This document shows, one piece after another, positions 43,800 to 54,623 of a stretch of DNA of 64,000 nucleotides. Both the position numbers and the translations under genes were made by a program. Source of the stretch: Ruditapes philippinarum (taxonomy: Eukaryota); contig NW_026856168.1 of the NCBI RefSeq assembly GCF_026571515.1, forward strand, positions 310,001 to 374,000, given 5' to 3'. The notes beneath the pieces are model-generated. The model saw only the letters and a program-made list of their open reading frames with translations. It was not told where the DNA came from and did not search any database. Position 1 is the first letter of the stretch, and every line of letters starts with the position of its first letter.

Positions 43800-46700
43800 G
43801 CAATAACTAAGCGGTTGGTCTTTTTACCTCAAGACACGCCTAGACTACCCTAGACTACCCCAAGATACGCCAAGACTACCCCAAGACACTCAAAAACACG
43901 TTTACCTAAATGTTAATACGGTCTTAATTTTACATTGTTTACAGGAGGTAACTATACGACATTGAATTATCTCCCTTCATTTATTTACTTGTACATTTTG
44001 TAATGTAATATTATAAATTATCTTTGTGCAAAATAGTTTACAATATTGAAACAATGCCAAGGTTACCGGGTTTTGGCGAAGTGCAAGTTTAATATTGCGA
44101 CAATGTCATTTTATGAGTAAAGTATTTTTGATGCCTTACATATTAAACGCATAATTTTTTTTTCTGTAAAGTTGATTTAAAAAAATATTCACGGAGAGAG
44201 TTTTCAAAAAAGCTTTACAAGCTTCCTACTCAATCCGTAAATTTTATTTTATGTAATTTATTATGTAAATGTGTGGATTATTAATAAGATATTGTTTAAA
44301 CTAAAAAAATATTCATAAAGAGCATAAAATAAATATTTTACTAATGAAAAAAAGTTCATACATAATTGACCATATTTGTATGGAGGGCGATCGTTTGCCA
44401 AAATTCAGACATGTAATGTGTTCCTTTTTGAAAAAACTACTTTTGAAAATGCGAACATTGTATGTCTAGCATTTTTTATTACATTCGTGCACAGGCAAAT
44501 GATATGCCTCTTAATCCATATTATTAATTGAAGGCACCAGCTTTTAAATAACAAGTTTTACATGTAAATCTTAACAACCGACCTAACATGGGGAACACAA
44601 CAACTTTTACAAGTTCGTATTTACCATTGGCATTTTAATAATACATAAGCATGTTTTACCACACTTGTAGATATATATCTGTACCTGAAAACACAAATGA
44701 AATGTAAAACTCGAATGCAGAAAATATAATTTAATAAAACATGTTCCAGTCGTAGAAACTACAACAGTACGTTTACACAGTCTACATGTTTAAAATGACA
44801 AAAGTAGATTCACAAAGTTTAAACGATTCTAAGTCATGCATGACGCCCCGCCTCTCTCTGAGTATTTACGATCTTCTATCACGGAAATGTACGGACAGGT
44901 ATAATACCCGTCGCCTCTCTCCTATTTCTCAAATAAAGTGAAGGAAAACACGGCGTCCATTCTAACTTTTTTTTATTTCTATAAAAGTCCAATCAAGTAT
45001 TGGTATCAAAATGAAAGATTACTCCATAAGCTTTCTATGAGTGCCTTCGGAAATAAAAATGAATTAAATAGATGTATTGAATTTTAGGGTTTTTTTACTC
45101 TGAAAATAACAACTATCGAATTGGTAAGAAAAACACGGCGTTCCCTCCAACTTTTTTTTAAGTTTGTAATATATTTTTGATAATTTTGGATTAAAATAAA
45201 AAGTGTGCTTCATACGATTTATGATATATTATTATATAATGCCTAAAAACAAAAAATGAATTAAATCAAACTGAATTAACTTTTCGTTAAAAAGTTTATC
45301 ATGTTACTTTCTGTAAAATAGAGAAAATAAGAATCCCTAAAGAACGCTCAAAACGAAAAAATTGAGAATGTTGCAGGCCGGTTTGATTGAGCCTGCTCAT
45401 GGACGGTAATGGAAAGAGCAAGTTATCGTCCACGCCCCCTAGCACCGGGCTTAAGCAAAATTCAACATGAACTGGTACAATTTTGAAACATTCGCAGATG
45501 TGTTAATATGGCGATTATATGGAACCTTCAATGTGTGACACGTAAGTGCCATACCATGAAAAACGGCATATGATACACAAGTAAAAAAAAAAACACACTC
45601 TGAAATTCAGTAAGAAAAAACATGGCGCCCCCTACTTACTTTTTTTATTTCTTGGTCAATTTTGATAATAACCAGATCATCAAGGAAAGGCGGCGTTGAT
45701 AATTTTAGATTTCAAGTAAAAGAATCCTTTATGAACTTTCTAGTGATGCCTTAAAATGAAAATTAATTATGTAGAGGTATTAAAAAAAATTTGTTTCTAA
45801 CTTATCGTTGTTTATTTTTTTTTCTCTTAAATCAACACTCATATATTCGGAAAAAATAACGTCGCTTCCTTTAGATTACTTTATTCAAAAGGAAATTGAA
45901 TATTGAATGAAATTTAAGACCATAAGCTTGAACAAGTATATTAAAAATCTGGAACAAAGTGATCCCTCGGAAGCATTAAACACAACAAAAATAACATAAG
46001 GATTGCAGATTTCGGTTTTGATTGAGTCTGCACATGAGGGATAATGAACAAGTGCAACATCCCTCATGCCCCCTAGCCACCGGCTTGAACCGGTACTCAA
46101 TTCTCAACACTTAATAGCGCTGGCATCAATGATCCCGAAGGACCAGAAAAAACACTGAAGTGAAGTACGGGGCAACTTTTTACAGCTGCCACACGGCACT
46201 TGACACCTGCTGTTGTGAAGTATTAAAATCTGGAAACAAAGTGATCCCTCGGAAGCATTACTTCACTACAAATTACATAAGATTGCAGACTCGGTTTGAT
46301 TGAGTCTGTACATGAGGGATAATGAACAAGTGCAAAAGTTTTATTCATACTGAAAATACCTTTTTAAAGATTGTATATTATGTGCTACGGATAAGTATTT
46401 TCTTGATTTCGGAAAGGAAATCTCGATGGCCGCTTTAAAATCCTATTTTTGCAAATACTTGCATAGTTTTTTGTTGAAAATGAAATTTGTGCCAATACAT
46501 TTTTCAATGATACCAATAAGATATATTGGATGGTTATCAATGAAATTACTCCCTTGAAGTTGGGCATTGTTTCCCCTAAAAAATTTCCAAATTCGCCGAT
46601 GTTTCTCAGGAATATATGATAACAAGATCAACAAGGAAAGGCGGCGCTCAATGAACGCACCCTACATGACCAGCCAGCAACAAGAACAAGTGGCAGGAAG

Positions 46701-47650: not shown

Positions 47651-47847
47651 CAGAAGACACGAACAAGCATTCTTTCGCTCCGGCACATGAAAAAACGGCA
47701 TGGCACAAATAAAGATCCATAACCTTCACGAACTAAAAAAGGAAAGCAAAATACATTCTTGTCCTATAAACTTTATTTTTGATAAATATATTTACAAACA
47801 AGAGCTATTGCATTACACGAATAATGCGTCTTCTTAACGTACGTCGT

Positions 47848-49345
47848 TTACAAGGGACACTGTCTGTTGCATTCATAAAGCTGGAGACATGCGCATTCAT
47901 CCAGTTGTTCGGCGCACGCGGAACACAGGCCAGATAATATAAATCCTACAATAGAGCCAGTTTGAGCTGGGTCGGTGTAATCTATCTCTGAAAAAGGTAA
48001 AAGTTACGTTTATTCAAAGTTGATAGTTAGCGACAGTGAAAAGGTACAGTATAATTCAGTTCAGTCAAAAATATTCCAAAATAAAATGTTTTGTGTGAGG
48101 AAGTAGATCTATTGTTAAACAGAACTTAAATATCTGAGTAATTTCACTAGAAAAGTAAAGAACTATCCTGTATATTTTACTTTAGAACTTTATAATGGCA
48201 AGAACTATCTTTTATATGTTTTGGCCAATGAGATTCCCAAATTTCTTTATTTTTTTTTTGTTTAAAATGACTAATGAAAACTCTTCATATATTCAGTACT
48301 TCCCTGTAAAATTTTCAGGAAGTCAGACTGATTTTAAGGGGAAAAGGTTTAAAAATGGAAAAAAAGTAGTTCCAACATGGCATATAAAAACGATATATAC
48401 ATAAATTTACTTACTTATACCCTTGGCAACGATTTCCTTGTTAAACATATCTTGGACTTCTTTCCTGGCCAACAAGGTTTCGCTTATTTGTTTTGATTTA
48501 CGCACGTGCTCTTTAAATGTTTTATAATCATTGCGCGTGACTGCTGATGATTCAACTGCAGACACCTTAAAGAAATATAAAAAAGTCTTAATATCATAGT
48601 CATATCTTTAGAAAATATATACACGAACTTCCCTACATTTCAAATACATGTATTTATTTTGCACGGAACAAAAAGAAAAGAAAAAAAATTTCGTACAAAA
48701 TAAATGTTGTCAGAGGAATGTTTGTAGTTTAAACATTTATTTCACGAGGCCGCAATTCAACAATTTTATGTTACAACATAATTATATTATCAACGTGAAA
48801 TGTTTGGTCTAATTACAAGACAAAAAATAACAACAAGTAAACAAAGACGAAGCACGTTTAAGCTAGAAAAACCAAAACAAGCGAATTTTAGAAATCTATG
48901 ATGACAAAAATTAAGGTGAAGTATTTCAAGTATTTCAAGTGTAATGCCAAAAAAAAAAAAAAAAAAAAAAAAAGAAGAGAAAAAATGTATATAATGAACA
49001 GAAAATTCAAGTCTTTTCTATTAATACAGGGTTTATTTTCATCTTGTGGTATGAAAATTATCATATTTCACTCGTGGCTACCGCCACTCATAAAATATTT
49101 ATTTTCATACCACTCGATGAAAATAGACCCTGTATTTATAGGAAAAAAGCTTAAATATCCTCTATATATTATTGAACAGTTTCTAAAACAATAAAACATA
49201 AACACTTTGATAAATGATTTATAAATAAAGTAAATAAAAGTTAGCTTACCTGTTCTAAATTTTTCTTTACAGCCTTTGCCGACGAATAGTTTCCCGTCCA
49301 TCCCCATAACATAAAAATAGTGAATAGAATATATGATAAACACAT
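47848..49345 (-). CDS. Small secreted Cys-rich protein of unknown function (gene D), 128 aa; exons 49345-49250, 48565-48415, 47987-47848
   Basis: Signal-like MCLSYILFTIFMLWGWTGNYSSAKA; junctions CAG|GTAAGC, TTTAAG|, A|GTAAGT, TTTTCAG| with matching phases 0 and 1; C-terminus LCSACAEQLDECACLQLYECNRQCPL*; TATAAATA about 75 bp upstream; AATAAA about 70 bp downstream. Confidence 0.8.
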
Positions 49346-49419
49346 TGCTTTAACAGTGTACATTCTGACTCCTCAGCAAAAACTCACAAAAAATAATATT
49401 TACTTTGTACAGTATTGTA

Positions 49420-49427
49420 TATTTATA
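49420..49427 (-). promoter_or_regulatory. TATA box of gene D
   Basis: TATAAATA on the minus strand about 75 bp upstream of ATG 49345; the same motif occupies a similar position for gene E. Confidence 0.5.
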
Positions 49428-49827
49428 ACTTAGCTTGTTGTCACGTTAACGTACATTAGTTCGTGTCATATTACGTCAACGTTGGACACGCAACAACATA
49501 GATTGTATATTTTCCGTTTTGACAAATGAATAGATAATGTTTACATCTTACGTAAAAAAACGCTCTGTATCTTGGGCGCAAAAATGTAACTATATAGTTT
49601 AATTAATTAAACGCTCCTCTTTCAGTTATGTGTCAAACAATAACGTCAATGCCGTTAACGTCATTAGTCAATACGGTCATCTTTACGTCTAATTACATGT
49701 GGAGCCATCCTACGCGATTTTATAGGGTTTTAATTGGCTTCCTCTTTCTCTTTAATCCACGAATGAGAATTTTCTAGGTACGCACGAGAAACAGAGTAAA
49801 TAGCATCAATGAAGTTGAACTGTTACA

Positions 49828-50183
49828 TATGGTGGCTGATTTGGTACACTTTGCACGTTGCGTTATCGAAAGCGACAACACAACCTATATCGTTATCGCC
49901 TTTCGTCTTGTCGTCCTGTTGCTAGTGAAGCACGCCAAACGGCGCGTTGTCGTGTGGCGCGATGTCGCCCTGTCGCTTGGTTTATTGGTTTATATTTATA
50001 CAAGTCGCAAATCCTTCGATTTGAGCCAAGCGACAAGGAGACATCGCGACAACATGTCACAAGACAACGGGCCTTTTGGCATGTTTCGTTAGCGACAGGA
50101 CGACATGACGAAAGTTCGACAATGCGCCAGTTGGCGCTTTGTCGTGCTGTCGCTAGCAGAAGTGTACCAAATCAGCCACCATA
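49828..50183. mobile_element. IS3EU-like MITE
   Basis: Perfect 24-bp TIRs TATGGTGGCTGATTTGGTACACTT; near-TSD GTTACA/GTTAAA. Confidence 0.8.
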
Positions 50184-50475
50184 GTTAAACTTTGTTTCAA
50201 GAGCCACTTAAGTACTTACTTTTTTGCGCCAAGGTAGATATGAGTTAAACTTCAAACTTAAAGAAGACACCCTACCTTTTTAAGAAATGGAATTAAGTGC
50301 GTACGCATTTAGCGATTGATCGAAAGTAAAAAATAAATAAAGAACTTTGAGCAGCCAATTTGGCATGGACAAATATTTACAAATACCATTTTCCTTTCAA
50401 ACAGACATTTTCAATCAGAAGAAAAATCATTTAAAATAAACGCCCATTTAATTTGATCATTAAGAGTTTGAGACA

Positions 50476-51952
50476 TTGGTGTTTGAATAATGACTTTATA
50501 TATTAAGCACCACCTCATTATACACATACTGTCACGTTGGTGTTTGAATAATGACTTTATATATTAAGCACCACCTCATTATACACATACTGTCTCGTTG
50601 GTGTTTGAATAATGACTTTATATATTAAGCACCACCTCATTATACACATACTGTCACGTTTAGTGTTGAAATAATGACTTTATATATTAAAACACAACCT
50701 CATTATACACATACTATCACGTTTAGTGTTGAAATAATGACTTTATATATTAAAACACAACCTCATTATACACATACTGTCACGTTGGTGTTTGAATAAT
50801 GACTTTATATATTAAAACACCACCTCATTATACACATACTGTCACGTTTAGTGTTTAAATAATGACTTTATATATTAAAACACCACCTCATTATACACAT
50901 ACTGTCACGTAAGTGTTTAAATAATGACTTTATATATTAAAACACCACCTCATTATACACATACTGTCACGTTAGTGTTTAAATAATGACTTTATATATT
51001 AAAACACCACCTCATTATACACATACTGTCACGTTGGTGTTTGAATAATGACTTTATATATTAAGCACCACCTCATTATACACATACTGTCTCGTTGGTG
51101 TTTGAATAATGACTTTATGTATTAAAACACCATCTCATTATACACATACTGTCTCGTTGGTGTTTGAATAATGACTTTATATATTAAGCACCACCTCATT
51201 ATACACATACTGTCTCGTTGGTGTTTGAATAATGACTTTATGTATTAAGCACCACCTCATTATACACATACTGTCTCGTTGGTGTTTGAATAATGACTTT
51301 AATATGGTGGCTAATTTGGTACGCTTTTGTGCGTCTACTTGGCGCTAAGGACAACACAACAAAGCGCCAAAGGGCGCGTTGTCGGATTTTCGTCTTGTCG
51401 TCCTGTCACTAGCGACAACACGACTAAGCACCAAACAGCGCGTTGTCGCGCTGTCGTCTTGTCGTCCTGTCTCTAGCGCGACACGCCAAACGTCGCGATG
51501 TCGTGAGGCGCGATGTCGAACTGTCGCTTGGCTTATAGGCCAATTCCTCAATTTGAATCAAGCGCCAATGTGACATCGTGACAACACGCAGCACGACAAC
51601 GCACCGTTTGGCGTGCCGCGCTAGAGACGGGACGACAAGACGACAGCGCGACAACGCGCCGTTTGGCGCTTTGTCGTGTTGTCGCTAGCGCCAACGCAAC
51701 ACACAAAAGCGTACCAAATAAGCCACCACACTTTATATATTGAAATACTCATACTGTCACGTTGGTGTTTGAATAATGACTTTATACATATAAACACCAC
51801 CTCATTATACACACACTGTCTCGTTGTTTTTTGAATAATTACTTTATATATTCAAACACCATCTCACTATACACATACTGTCACGTTGGTGTTTAAATAA
51901 TGACTTTATTTATTAAAACACCACCTCATTATACACATACTGTCATGTTGGT
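50476..51952. repeat. 61-63 bp tandem repeat (about 17 copies) interrupted by a MITE; the last unit overlaps the 3' coding end of gene E
   Basis: TTGGTGTTTGAATAATGACTTTATATATTAAGCACCACCTCATTATACACATACTGTCACG repeated. Confidence 0.95.
51303..51730. mobile_element. IS3EU-like MITE inserted in the tandem array
   Basis: TIRs TATGGTGGCTAATTTGGTACGCTTTTGTG / CACAAAAGCGTACCAAATAAGCCACCACA; near-TSD CTTTAA/CTTTAT; similar to 49828-50183. Confidence 0.8.
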
Positions 51953-53070
51953 GCTGACACAATGAGCACAGCATATCACTTGCAATGTCTACAATTTTTG
52001 GGTCGGTATCTTCACTGAAACCAAGCTCATCTGAAATTCGATGTGAAATAAGATGGTTTTAACAACGGTCAATAAATAAAAGCTGTGTATTATAATTTCA
52101 TATTTTTTCCGTTTTAAGAGTCTCATTTGAACTACCGGTATGTAAGATTTTAAATTTCTATATTTCTAGGCTTTTGAAACCCAGCGGAGTTTCTTTTAGT
52201 CGGTCAGCATACCCATGTAGTCTGACAAGTTCTTAAACTGTCGGCTGCATTTTTCAAACAAAAATTGGTATCAGATATCTTCAAACAACAATGGTTTGAT
52301 CTTAATGGAGACCAGGAACAGTCTATACACATATGGTGGTGTTAATGTTTATACATGTACCAGTATGGAATAAAAAACATACCTCTTCGACAAGTTACTG
52401 GTTGTATTCTCTCATCATTAACGAAGCTTGTTGTGTCTGCATCTTGAATAACGGACATGATTATTTTCGGGTCACCGGGTACAATCAGAAATGCAGAAGA
52501 TATTAAAATCTCCCCCGTCTTTTCAAGTTTCCGTGTTGTCTGTTTTCTTTTTTGAGCATGCCTTGTGTCACAGTTGGTGTTTGATGTTCCTGTTGACGGT
52601 ACAGTAGATATTGGCGAAGAAGTTGCTTTAGAAGAGTGAGCTGATGGTGAAGTATTAGTTGCAGACGACTCTTTGCTTGTCTCAGGTGGCATCAATGTAA
52701 CTGTAGTTTTTTGTTTATTGTCCGCTGAGTTTTCGACATCTTTTTCCCATCTAAAACTATCTGGGTACAAGTCCCTGATATAAGCTGCCACGCATCTTGT
52801 TCTCTGAGAACCTTTTGTGCGTTTACATTTTGCTAAAAGTTCATCATTAGCAGACGACTTTTTAACTTCTGCGGAGGAAAATGTTTTGTCGAAAAAGAGG
52901 CTCAGAAATGAGCTCTGTCCGGATTGTTCCAAATCACCTATTGTCTGAAGATTTTCAGATTTATTGTTTTTAGTCTTTTTAGGATATCCACTTATGAAGA
53001 ATAATAGTTCAGCACTAAAAAGAAAGAACAGAACATGACTTGTGTTCGTTTTCATTACTGATTTAACCAT
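51906..53070 (-). CDS. Secreted protein of unknown function (gene E): signal peptide, Ser/Thr-rich linker, Cys-rich C-terminus; exons 53070-52383, (52322-52213, 1 nt short of frame), 52030-51906
   Basis: 229-codon first exon with hydrophobic N-terminus, AG|GTATGT phase-1 donor, TTTCAG acceptor, last exon DELGFSEDTDPKIVDIASDMLCSLCQHQHDSMCIMRWCFNK* aligning with gene D; TATAAATA about 90 bp upstream. Confidence 0.75.
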
Positions 53071-53159
53071 TTATACACCGTGCAGTTGTTTGCATGCATC
53101 TTATAAACATGTAATGAACACTTAATAGTGTACAAGTAAAGCATTTAAGGCTGTCGCAC

Positions 53160-53167
53160 TATTTATA
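53160..53167 (-). promoter_or_regulatory. TATA box of gene E
   Basis: TATAAATA on the minus strand about 90 bp upstream of ATG 53070. Confidence 0.5.
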
Positions 53168-54623
53168 CAAAATATTAAAGTCTTCGATGTGTGCACACTC
53201 AATCGAAAAAAAATCCCCCCAGCTTCTCAGCATTCTCAGTTAAACGGCTTTGAATAAGGCAACTTAATTAAAGGCACATTATGCCTCAGACACAACATTA
53301 GAAAGGTCAAACATGAGTTTGATATCGTTTAAATAATGGTGTCAGAGCATTTTAGATGCTTATCAACCGAAGAAAGAAGTGTTGAATGTGACACTGTTTG
53401 TCATAAAAGTAGCAATATGTAAACTAAGTAGTATTTTAGCTTCCATGCATATAAATACTAAATCTCTGTACATGTATTTAATGCTAAAAAGCAAACGATG
53501 CAAAAGATTGTACTTATAATTAGAAAGTGAGTAACTGTTTGGAAACTACAACTGAATAGAAAGCTTTTGATAATAGAAAATTAAAATATTTAAGGAGTAA
53601 TGGACCTTTAATGTTAATTAGATTAAGCGGGAAACAACTCTTTAAAAATTCATGAAACGTAATAGGAGACTTCAAAAAAATACTGTTGGTTAATTACCAT
53701 TAGGAAATAATCTCAAATCACAATCTCTCTCATACCATTATTCACCCGATCTCAAACCCGTAGTTAACAAGTTCTTTACCAGATCTCTAAATTGTCCCAA
53801 AGTTATTTTGATTACCCCGAAAATTTGAAAACATGAACTATTTTTTACTTCAAAGAATTTCCATATGGTCCATTTAGTTATGATGTTTTTATAAAGTTTA
53901 ACACAAAAAACGAACCTCATATCTTGGGAATTTGTGTATGTTTCATAAAACATTCGAAAGCTTTCGCAAAAGCCATGATCTTCTTTATTTTTATCAGGAT
54001 AACTCACAATTCAATCGCAAATTGTCGGTGTTATCCGTAAGTCTCAAACTGTCCAATCAGATTCGTTTAACGCATATTTTCGGTCTTAACCGTCCAACTC
54101 CAGATAAGGACTGTTGGTTATCGGCGAATTGTTCCGAACGTTTTTTCTCTCCATATTTTCCAGAATTCTTTAAATCATTATTTTAAAAGATAAAAGAAGA
54201 CTGTCGTTTTAGGCTAAATCGTGATGAAACCGAACGATTTTACATTTGCACAATGAAGAAGAGGTTAGCTACAACCTTAACCAGCGACACGTTACCGAGG
54301 TTACACTAAATAATCATTATATAGAATGTTATCATTAATCACCTCTGCCTTAAAGCATGTTGTCTAGATGTTACAGGCTAAAATTGTGTACTTTACCACG
54401 CGTTTCGCCTAATTTATTCTTACATTTGTTTTATGCGTCTGAATTCAACCAAATAAATTCACACACACAAAAAAACAGCAACAACAAAAAAAAAACAGTT
54501 ATTTTGACAAGTAATCGTTTTCTTGAAATAAATAGTGTACCGAGAACTAGGGACTATTTAAGTATGAATAAAAATTTATGAAAGTATTTTCTAACCAAAT
54601 AAACTTTAGTTTACACTTTATGT

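What the first reader, a model, noticed from the sequence alone, without database searches (positions are those of the whole stretch)
47848..53070. Hidden pair of related secreted Cys-motif genes (D and E): a candidate undescribed small family
Seen: two adjacent minus-strand spliced genes, each with a TATAAATA box, a signal peptide and a phase-1 last exon. Their last exons align without gaps up to the CxxC: KIDYTDPAQTGSIVGFILSGLCSACAEQLDECAC.. vs DELGFSEDTDPKIVDIASDMLCSLCQHQHDSMC... Both have exactly 21 residues before the first Cys, IV at positions 13-14 and LCSxCxxQxD. Everything upstream differs: D is 128 aa with a short charged region, while E is about 270-307 aa with a Ser/Thr linker and dibasic sites. 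Gene D is not shown as such in the ORF track. I do not recognise the domain. Inference: an exon-sized helical disulfide module reused in different secreted proteins, possibly a processed defence or mucus peptide.
Basis: partly seen in the sequence, partly recalled or inferred. Interest (0 to 1): 0.8.

Follow-up and report, generated by a model that had tools for sequence, protein, structure and literature searches.

The report
Two neighbouring orphan secreted-protein genes in clam
Two adjacent, expressed, spliced genes of the Manila clam encode small secreted-type cysteine-containing proteins with no detectable relatives anywhere, and their resemblance to each other is suggestive but not proven, so this is an ordinary pair of lineage-restricted genes rather than a demonstrated new family.

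Summary
Both genes are real. Gene D has exons 49363-49250, 48565-48415 and 47987-47848. Gene E has exons 53055-52383 and 52030-51906. Both last exons follow a phase-1 intron. Gene D is not hidden: it equals RefSeq XP_060590596.1, "uncharacterized protein LOC132745663" of Ruditapes philippinarum, 134 aa. Gene E reads 265 aa. The contigs skip the proposed middle exon, and the searches returned no spliced E protein. Neither gene has a relative in 1.84 billion representatives (D's last exon only), 5.8 billion proteins, Pfam, PDB sequences or the clam's own genome. The quoted motif is exactly as described. Its weight is borderline: 12 of 2000 shuffles reach the gapped score, and the two exons are near-reciprocal best among 2051 open segments of the window, yet one non-coding segment scores higher and BLASTP does not report the match. 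I put true homology at about 0.55. One new point: E's last 16 codons, its stop and its AATAAA are the first unit of a 61-63-bp satellite found only at this locus. Function stays inferred: secreted proteins with a basic N-terminal part and an acidic, probably helical, disulfide-bonded C-terminus. The scan's earlier notes on this window list no duplicate of this finding.

The parts
49250..49363 (-). Gene D exon 1, coding part (38 codons, signal-peptide-like N-terminus). The transcript contigs continue upstream to at least 49467.
   Evidence: Joint 48563(+2)|49248(+2) in X1. Contigs 49248-49467 (X1) and 49248-49454 (X3). Translation equals P0002 residues 1-38.
48415..48565 (-). Gene D exon 2 (151 nt, Lys/Glu-rich, ends in phase 1)
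   Evidence: Joints on both sides in X1. P0002 residues 39-89.
47848..47987 (-). Gene D exon 3. It codes 45 residues plus the split Lys codon, with six Cys spaced CxxC-x6-CxC-x5-C-x4-C, then the stop at 47850-47848.
   Evidence: Joint 47987|48415 in X1. phmmer hit P0002 at 90-134, 100% identical.
52383..53055 (-). Gene E exon 1, coding part (224 codons + 1 nt): hydrophobic N-terminus, basic region, S/T-rich stretch, 7 dibasic sites, ending in RR
   Evidence: 242-aa open frame. Contigs 52383-53028 (X1) and 52383-53004 (X3). P0001 is 99% identical. Chance of such an open frame is about 2e-9.
51906..52030 (-). Gene E last exon, coding part (2 nt + 40 codons + stop), with four Cys. Its last 16 codons lie in the satellite.
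   Evidence: Joint 52030|52383 in X1 and X3. An X3 contig of 740 nt covers 51916-52030 joined to 52383-53004.
51745..51953 (-). Satellite, first block (3.4 units of 62 bp). The first unit holds E's C-terminal codons, its stop and the only AATAAA.
   Evidence: Sequence read.
50476..51305 (-). Satellite, second block (13.5 units of 61-63 bp, 95% matches)
   Evidence: Found only at this locus in the own genome.
51305..51728 (.). Foldback, MITE-like insert that splits the satellite
   Evidence: Inverted repeats I1 and I2 (110-114-nt arms, 85-88% complementary).
49823..50188 (.). Related MITE-like element between genes E and D
   Evidence: Inverted repeat I6 and its pairings I3-I5 with the 51305-51728 element.
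49421..49427 (-). TATAAAT motif upstream of D's ATG. Promoter role is unverified.
   Evidence: The contigs extend upstream of it.
53069..53075 (-). TATAAAT motif overlapping the first in-frame ATG of E's open frame. Promoter role is unverified. A second copy lies at 53161-53167.

Best explanation
The region holds two genuine, neighbouring, same-strand genes of the Manila clam Ruditapes philippinarum. Both encode lineage-restricted proteins of the secreted type.

Gene D (RefSeq LOC132745663, 134 aa, three exons) has a cleavable-looking signal peptide, then a basic Lys/Glu-rich part of about 60 residues (pI 9.9) that is probably helical. It ends in an acidic 45-residue last exon (pI 4.1): a hydrophobic helix that ends in CxxC, a short loop, and a second helix carrying CxC, C and C. 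The most likely reading is a helical hairpin locked by three disulfides.

Gene E (265 aa, two exons) has the same layout on a larger scale. It has a signal peptide, a basic region (pI 9.4) with an S/T-rich and probably O-glycosylated stretch and several dibasic sites, and an acidic 41-residue last exon (pI 4.6) with four Cys.

Shown: the exon structure, the transcription, and the lack of any detectable relative.

Inferred:
- Secretion and disulfide bonding.
- That D and E are old tandem duplicates which kept only the C-terminal helix-CxxC module (probability about 0.55).
- That the 61-63-bp satellite downstream of E arose by tandem duplication of E's own 3' end, which is 16 codons, the stop and the start of the 3' UTR.

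The biological role is unknown. My best guess is extracellular structural or defence-type proteins made in a restricted tissue.
For: Splicing:
- All three introns have GT..AG ends in the contigs of X1 (D and E) and X3 (E).
- Every exon is single-copy in the 1.41-Gb assembly, so the joined forms are not retrocopies in the assembly.

Identity and coding:
- D equals XP_060590596.1.
- E's open frame has a chance probability of about 2e-9.
- It is kept open, with 2 amino-acid changes, in an independent JGI contig (P0001).
- Variants in the E contigs are 2 synonymous, 2 conservative and one in-frame 3-nt insertion.

Layout:
- Both have a hydrophobic N-terminus, a basic body and an acidic Cys-bearing tail.

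Expression:
- Contigs of both genes are present in X1 and X3.
- Both are absent from the raw-read RNA runs X21 and X23.

Similarity of the last exons:
- Same intron phase and same 21-residue distance to the first Cys.
- 2 of 3000 shuffles (anchored), 53 of 3000 (ungapped) and 12 of 2000 (gapped) reach the observed scores.
- With the 25 non-satellite residues of E's exon as query, D's exon is the best non-self hit of 2051 segments.

Satellite:
- It starts at 51953 inside E's exon.
- It is found only at this locus.
- The exon part upstream of 51953 is not satellite-like.

Fold:
- D's last exon is predicted as helix 6-25 and helix 33-42.
Against: - The D-E similarity is within the range of chance on score alone. 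A non-coding segment of the window scores 39 against 38.
- BLASTP gives no alignment of the two last exons.
- DNA of the two loci shows no similarity (best E 0.085). The two exons as DNA are not significant either.
- Everything upstream is unrelated (153 of 2000 and 562 of 2000 shuffles reach the scores; BLASTP E 0.44).
- D has an extra intron after the signal peptide that E lacks.
- No spliced E protein exists in the collections searched.
- E's start codon lies 27 nt beyond the end of the longest contig and only 14 nt from the nearer TATA motif.
- X1 and X3 are only guessed to be RNA.
- The structure models have low confidence (pLDDT 40.8 and 52.1).
- No signal-peptide predictor was run.
Confidence: 0.6

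Rival explanations
1. D and E are two unrelated orphan genes that happen to be neighbours. The shared TDP / IV / LCSxC..Q.D pattern is a coincidence between two short Cys-containing acidic peptides.
For: - A non-coding open segment at + 46133-46300 aligns to D's exon with a higher score, 39 against 38.
- BLASTP reports nothing.
- There is no DNA similarity.
- There is no third member that could bridge the two.
- Q.D and the later Cys of E lie in a satellite unit.
Against: - The chance hit would have to fall on the last exon of the adjacent, same-strand, co-occurring gene, in the same intron phase and the same register. The anchored score is reached by 2 of 3000 shuffles.
- The two exons rank 1st and 3rd of 2051 segments in the two directions.
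- The two proteins share the basic-body, acidic-tail layout.
Confidence: 0.4
2. Gene E is transcribed and spliced but is not, or is no longer, translated as the 265-aa secreted protein. It would be a decaying gene or a non-coding transcript whose 3' end has been overrun by a satellite.
For: - The only protein found for it is an unspliced ORF call from a JGI contig.
- The contigs do not reach ATG 53055.
- The nearer TATA motif would place the transcription start downstream of that ATG.
- An upstream start would add several upstream ATGs.
- The C-terminus is coded by a satellite.
Against: - A 265-codon open frame in 34% G+C DNA has a chance of about 2e-9.
- The frame is open in a second individual (P0001).
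- The indel seen in the contigs is in frame.
- Splicing continues the frame in the only one of three phases that stays open for 41 codons (sequence).
Confidence: 0.15
3. The last exons are released as free peptides: D and E would be precursors of processed bioactive peptides (hormone, pheromone or antimicrobial).
For: - E has RR at residues 223-224, exactly at the exon junction. Cleavage there would free a 41-residue peptide with four Cys.
- E has six further dibasic sites.
- Both proteins have signal-peptide-like N-termini.
Against: - D has no dibasic pair before its last exon. The junction reads KGIK|I.
- No relatives exist among known peptide precursors.
- No peptide data were available.
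Confidence: 0.15
4. D is not secreted. It would be a small type I membrane protein: residues 100-114 form a membrane anchor and the Cys-rich end is a cytoplasmic tail, possibly lipid-modified.
For: Residues 100-114 have a 15-residue hydropathy mean of 1.93, close to the 2.03 of the signal peptide.
Against: - No 19-residue window outside the N-terminus is among the three highest.
- The stretch is flanked by charges within 17 residues.
- The aligned stretch in E carries Asp residues and has a mean hydropathy of at most 1.03.
Confidence: 0.08

Closest known systems
Lineage-restricted (orphan) small secreted cysteine-rich proteins of bivalves, as a general class. The class is recalled from general knowledge, not from a call.
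   Same: Signal peptide, few short exons, an even number of Cys in a compact C-terminal part, neighbouring genes on one strand, expression that seems restricted to some samples, and no relatives outside the lineage.
   Different: No membership in any named family of that class could be shown. Function, tissue and disulfide map are unknown.
   Same: Predicted to be helical, with six Cys and a likely secreted location.
   Different: Pfam gave no match for either last exon even at E <= 10. All six Cys of D sit within 23 residues of a 45-residue exon. From recall, saposin domains are about 80 residues with Cys spread over four or five helices.
Helical-hairpin disulfide peptides (CS-alpha/alpha toxins, plant alpha-hairpinins), recalled and not tested by sequence
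   Same: Two short helices joined by a loop and cross-linked by disulfides. This is the shape that the low-confidence model gives D's last exon.
   Different: From recall, those families use twin CxxxC motifs and two disulfides. D has CxxC, CxC, C and C. No sequence relation was found.
Satellites born from gene ends (local tandem duplication of a 3' exon and UTR segment), a general mechanism that is recalled
   Same: The array starts inside E's last exon, is confined to this locus, and its first unit is the one with the working stop and AATAAA.
   Different: The direction of events, exon first or satellite first, is not shown.

Membership tests
Any curated protein domain (Pfam-A) | Score above the family's gathering threshold | tested here: not met
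   One search scanned five exon peptides. There were 0 families for D exons 1-3 and for E's last exon at E <= 10. E exon 1 gave only DUF5811 (13.7 bits against a cut-off of 25) and Mucin (12.7 against 34.7).
Saposin-like domain | Match to the SapB profiles, and six Cys spread over about 80 residues | tested here: not met
   No Pfam hit. The Cys span only 23 residues. The spacing rule is recalled.
Saposin-like domain | Four- or five-helix bundle fold | tested here: inconclusive
   The models have pLDDT 40.8 and 52.1, too poor for a fold search. The Atlas's own model has its best TM at 0.38.
Conotoxin-type C-C-CC-C-C framework | Vicinal CC as the third and fourth cysteines | tested here: not met
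   D's last exon has CxxC-x6-CxC-x5-C-x4-C with no vicinal CC. E's has CxxC-x7-C-x4-C. The framework definition is recalled.
D/E as one paralogous family (tandem duplicates) | Statistically significant sequence similarity | tested here: inconclusive
   12 of 2000 (gapped), 53 of 3000 (ungapped) and 2 of 3000 (anchored) shuffles reach the scores. But the rank is 3 of 2051 behind a non-coding segment, BLASTP is silent and the DNA comparison is not significant.
D/E as one paralogous family (tandem duplicates) | Adjacent, same strand, same intron phase before the shared exon | tested here: met
   Both are on the minus strand, 4 kb apart, and both have a phase-1 intron (junctions).
D/E as one paralogous family (tandem duplicates) | Further members or bridging sequences | tested here: not met
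   In the own genome each exon finds only itself. In 1.84 billion representatives there was 1 true hit of 4 listed. In the 5.8 billion collection each query found only itself or its own unspliced ORF.
Neuropeptide / prohormone precursor | Signal peptide plus dibasic sites that flank the candidate peptide | tested here: inconclusive
   E has RR directly before its last exon. D does not. Signal peptides were judged from hydropathy only.
Neuropeptide / prohormone precursor | Conservation of the peptide across species | tested here: not met
   No relatives were found in any collection searched. Genomes of other molluscs could not be searched directly.

The most novel reading that the evidence does not exclude
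The acidic helix-CxxC last exon is a previously undescribed disulfide module specific to venerid clams. It would be shared by two otherwise unrelated secreted proteins and, in E, set free by cleavage at the RR pair on the exon junction as a bioactive peptide. E's own coding 3' end would then have seeded a satellite, a caught-in-the-act case of a repeat family born from an exon.
Probability: 0.12. Interest if true: 0.5.

Novelty: new member of a known kind. Interest (0 to 1): 0.25.

Why it matters
If D and E share a true module, they would define a tiny clam-specific family of secreted disulfide proteins. That would be worth a tissue-expression and proteomics check, because such orphan secreted genes often underlie shell, mucus or immune traits of bivalves. 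As it stands, the practical value is in annotation. Gene E seems to lack a spliced protein model in the collections searched, and the junctions given here define one. The proposed middle exon is not used in the two runs examined. The satellite that begins inside E's last exon is a small, clean example for the study of how local repeats arise from gene ends.

Tried and rejected
- Known domain: rejected. Pfam found nothing for the last exons. PDB sequence searches found nothing better than E about 1, only coiled-coil noise from release factor 2 and ovotransferrin.
- Relatives elsewhere: none.
  - phmmer of D's last exon against 1.84 billion representatives gave 4 hits at E <= 0.001. One is D itself. 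The other three (P0003-P0005) are translated tandem repeats, and one of them looks like a translated CRISPR array. I dropped all three as spurious after reading them.
  - Word-based searches with E exon 1 (1 hit among 153 candidates, its own unspliced ORF) and with P0002 (1 hit among 4 candidates, itself) added nothing.
  - ESM Atlas gave no usable hit for D. For E exon 1 the best score was 0.78, a lead only.
  - A JGI metagenome scan with E exon 1 gave 265 pattern matches, none confirmed.
- 'E's exon is just a degenerate satellite copy': rejected for the part upstream of 51953. Its score of 10 is below the shuffle mean of 13.5.
- Duplication traces in the non-coding DNA of the two loci: none.
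- Structure: two single-sequence AlphaFold runs gave pLDDT 40.8 and 52.1. I ran no fold search, because matches of such models are meaningless.
- Papers: a full-text search for LOC132745663 found 0 papers. Two broader searches gave listings and abstracts only, none bearing on these genes. I read no paper further.
- The joined (spliced) protein of E was never built, searched or folded. E was handled exon by exon. For D, full-length steps used the database protein P0002 by its id.

Full report
WHAT IS THERE

The window is AT-rich eukaryotic DNA (34% G+C). It lies on contig C4655 of a 1.41-Gb assembly. The organism is the Manila clam, Ruditapes philippinarum. I know this because the protein found with gene D's last exon carries that source name.

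GENE D

Reading the minus strand and laying public runs on 47700-53200 gives three exons:
- 49363-49250: the ATG and 38 codons.
- 48565-48415: 151 nt.
- 47987-47848: 2 nt, 45 codons and the stop.

Run X1 holds contigs with the joints 48563(+2)|49248(+2) and 47987|48415. Both have CT..AC ends on the + strand, which is GT..AG on the gene's strand. The second donor lies 6 nt further on than a first reading by eye suggests.

phmmer with the 45-residue last exon against 1.84 billion representatives returned P0002, 134 aa, 100% identical over residues 90-134. Its sequence equals the three exons translated. It is XP_060590596.1, "uncharacterized protein LOC132745663". Gene D is therefore annotated but uncharacterised.

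GENE E

A 242-codon open frame lies at 53070-52342. It has a hydrophobic N-terminus when read from ATG 53055. Contigs of X1 and X3, from two studies, join 52383 directly to 52030, again with GT..AG ends. One 740-nt X3 contig covers 51916-52030 plus 52383-53004.

The intron is in phase 1, and the frame continues for 40 codons to a stop at 51908-51906. That gives 265 aa from ATG 53055. The 'middle exon' noted separately on this window (s1-793160, 52213-52322) is skipped by both contigs.

Several points support coding:
- An open frame of this length has a chance of about 2e-9 at this base composition.
- An independent JGI contig keeps it open, with two amino-acid changes (P0001).
- The differences seen in the contigs are two synonymous changes, Pro>Thr, Lys>Arg and one in-frame 3-nt insertion.

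Three things remain open:
- The contigs end at 53028 and 53004, so the start codon is not shown to be in the RNA.
- X1 and X3 are only guessed to be RNA. The intron-less joints argue that they are. Every exon is single-copy in the assembly, so no retrocopy explains the joints.
- The two raw-read RNA runs, X21 and X23, had no depth on any exon of either gene.

I did not build or search the joined E protein. E was treated exon by exon throughout.

PROMOTER MOTIFS

TATAAAT occurs 49 times in the window, against 41.5 ± 6.4 expected. One copy lies 58 nt upstream of D's ATG, but the D contigs extend 27-40 nt further upstream than that copy. The tool warns that contigs cannot show a transcript start. 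For E, the nearer copy overlaps the first in-frame ATG and ends 14 nt before ATG 53055. A second copy lies about 105 nt upstream. The motifs are there. Their role as promoters is untested.

THE SHARED MOTIF

Counting the split codon, both last exons have 21 residues before the first Cys, IV at positions 13-14 and LCSxCxxQxD. That is 8 of 40 identical residues.

How much does this weigh? Shuffling E's exon gives:

| Score tested | Shuffles that reach it |
|---|---|
| Junction-anchored | 2 of 3000 |
| Best ungapped local | 53 of 3000 |
| Gapped Smith-Waterman (38) | 12 of 2000 |

I also used a null made of real sequence: all 2051 stop-free segments of at least 20 aa in the six frames of the window.
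- With D's exon as query, E's exon ranks third. Self is first, and a non-coding segment at + 46133-46300 scores 39.
- With E's exon as query, D's exon is first after self and 13 satellite copies.
- With only the 25 non-satellite residues of E as query, D's exon is the best non-self hit, 32 against 30 for the next.

Against the relationship:
- BLASTP with composition correction does not report the alignment.
- The two exons share only the 9-nt ACCGACCCA as DNA, offset by four codons (66 of 500 shuffles reach the score).
- The two loci show no DNA similarity.
- Upstream of the last exon nothing is significant.

For it:
- The genes are adjacent, on the same strand and have the same intron phase.
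- Contigs of both are present in X1 and X3, and both are absent from X21 and X23.
- Both have a basic body and an acidic tail: pI 9.9 and 4.1 for D, 9.4 and 4.6 for E.

I put true homology at about 0.55.

THE SATELLITE, A NEW POINT

A satellite of 61-63-bp units fills 51745-51953 and 50476-51305, about 17 units in all. A 424-bp foldback, MITE-like element at 51305-51728 splits it. In the own genome the satellite matches only this locus.

Its first unit starts at 51953, inside E's last exon. So E's last 16 codons (with two of its four Cys, and the Q.D of the motif), its stop and the only intact AATAAA all belong to that unit. The exon upstream of 51953 is not satellite-like.

The simplest history is that E's 3' end was duplicated in tandem. 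The reverse order, an exon that ran into an older array, is not excluded. Either way, part of the 'shared motif' in E is satellite-coded.

IS IT A KNOWN THING?

No.
- Pfam gave no family for the last exons at E <= 10.
- PDB sequences gave nothing below E about 1.
- The protein collections hold only D itself and E's unspliced ORF.
- The other three hits are translated repeats, which I dropped after reading them.
- The Atlas gave no usable lead.
- A metagenome scan found nothing.
- A full-text search for the locus name found 0 papers.
- Single-sequence AlphaFold models are all-helical but poor: pLDDT 40.8 for P0002, and 52.1 for the last exon alone, with helices 6-25 and 33-42. I ran no fold search.

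HOW IT MOST LIKELY WORKS

This section is inference. Both products enter the secretory pathway. D would mature to about 105 residues: a basic helical part followed by an acidic helical hairpin held by three disulfides. E would carry a glycosylated S/T-rich stretch and end in a related four-Cys piece. That piece could be cut off at the RR pair on the exon junction. D has no such site.

The tissue and the role are unknown. The rivals are:
- chance resemblance (0.4);
- E not being translated (0.15);
- processed peptides (0.15);
- D being membrane-anchored through residues 100-114 (0.08).

VERDICT

This is a correct and careful observation of two real genes. One is already annotated. The other seems to lack a spliced protein model in the collections searched. 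The 'family' is at most two members in one species and is statistically borderline.

Orphan secreted Cys-containing genes are common in bivalves, a point I state from general knowledge. Interest is therefore modest, at 0.25. The scan's other notes on this window concern other features, and none duplicates this finding.

Noticed in passing
window 50476-51305 and 51745-51953: A 61-63-bp satellite of about 17 units, found only at this locus in the 1.41-Gb assembly. Its first unit is the coding 3' end, stop and AATAAA of gene E. The later units have AATATA or AATACA in place of AATAAA.
   Followed up: partly
window 51305-51728 and 49823-50188: Two related foldback, MITE-like elements with long inverted arms. 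The first one splits the satellite. Both draw many partly fitting RNA reads, so the element is probably high-copy in the genome.
   Followed up: partly
window 48988-49171 (intron 1 of gene D): A short inverted-repeat element with very high summed contig depth (1455 in X1, 8925 in X3) and many loose ends. It is a high-copy transcribed repeat, not part of gene D's mRNA.
   Followed up: no
A few X21 reads lie on 52116-52483 in one direction only, at depth about 1.
   Followed up: partly
window about 47813 (3' UTR of gene D): The X1 contig that carries D's last exon leaves the window sequence at 47813 and runs on for 38 unlike letters. It may be an allelic variant, a further splice or a chimeric contig.
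   Followed up: no
window 46133-46300 (+): An open segment of 56 codons with four Cys aligns to D's last exon slightly better than E's exon does (39 against 38). I take it for chance, and it sets the scale for what chance gives in this window.
   Followed up: partly
proteins P0003-P0005: The representative library holds translated repeat DNA as 'proteins'. One of them looks like a translated CRISPR array. Such entries give misleadingly good E-values (down to 2e-10) to short Cys-containing queries.
   Followed up: partly
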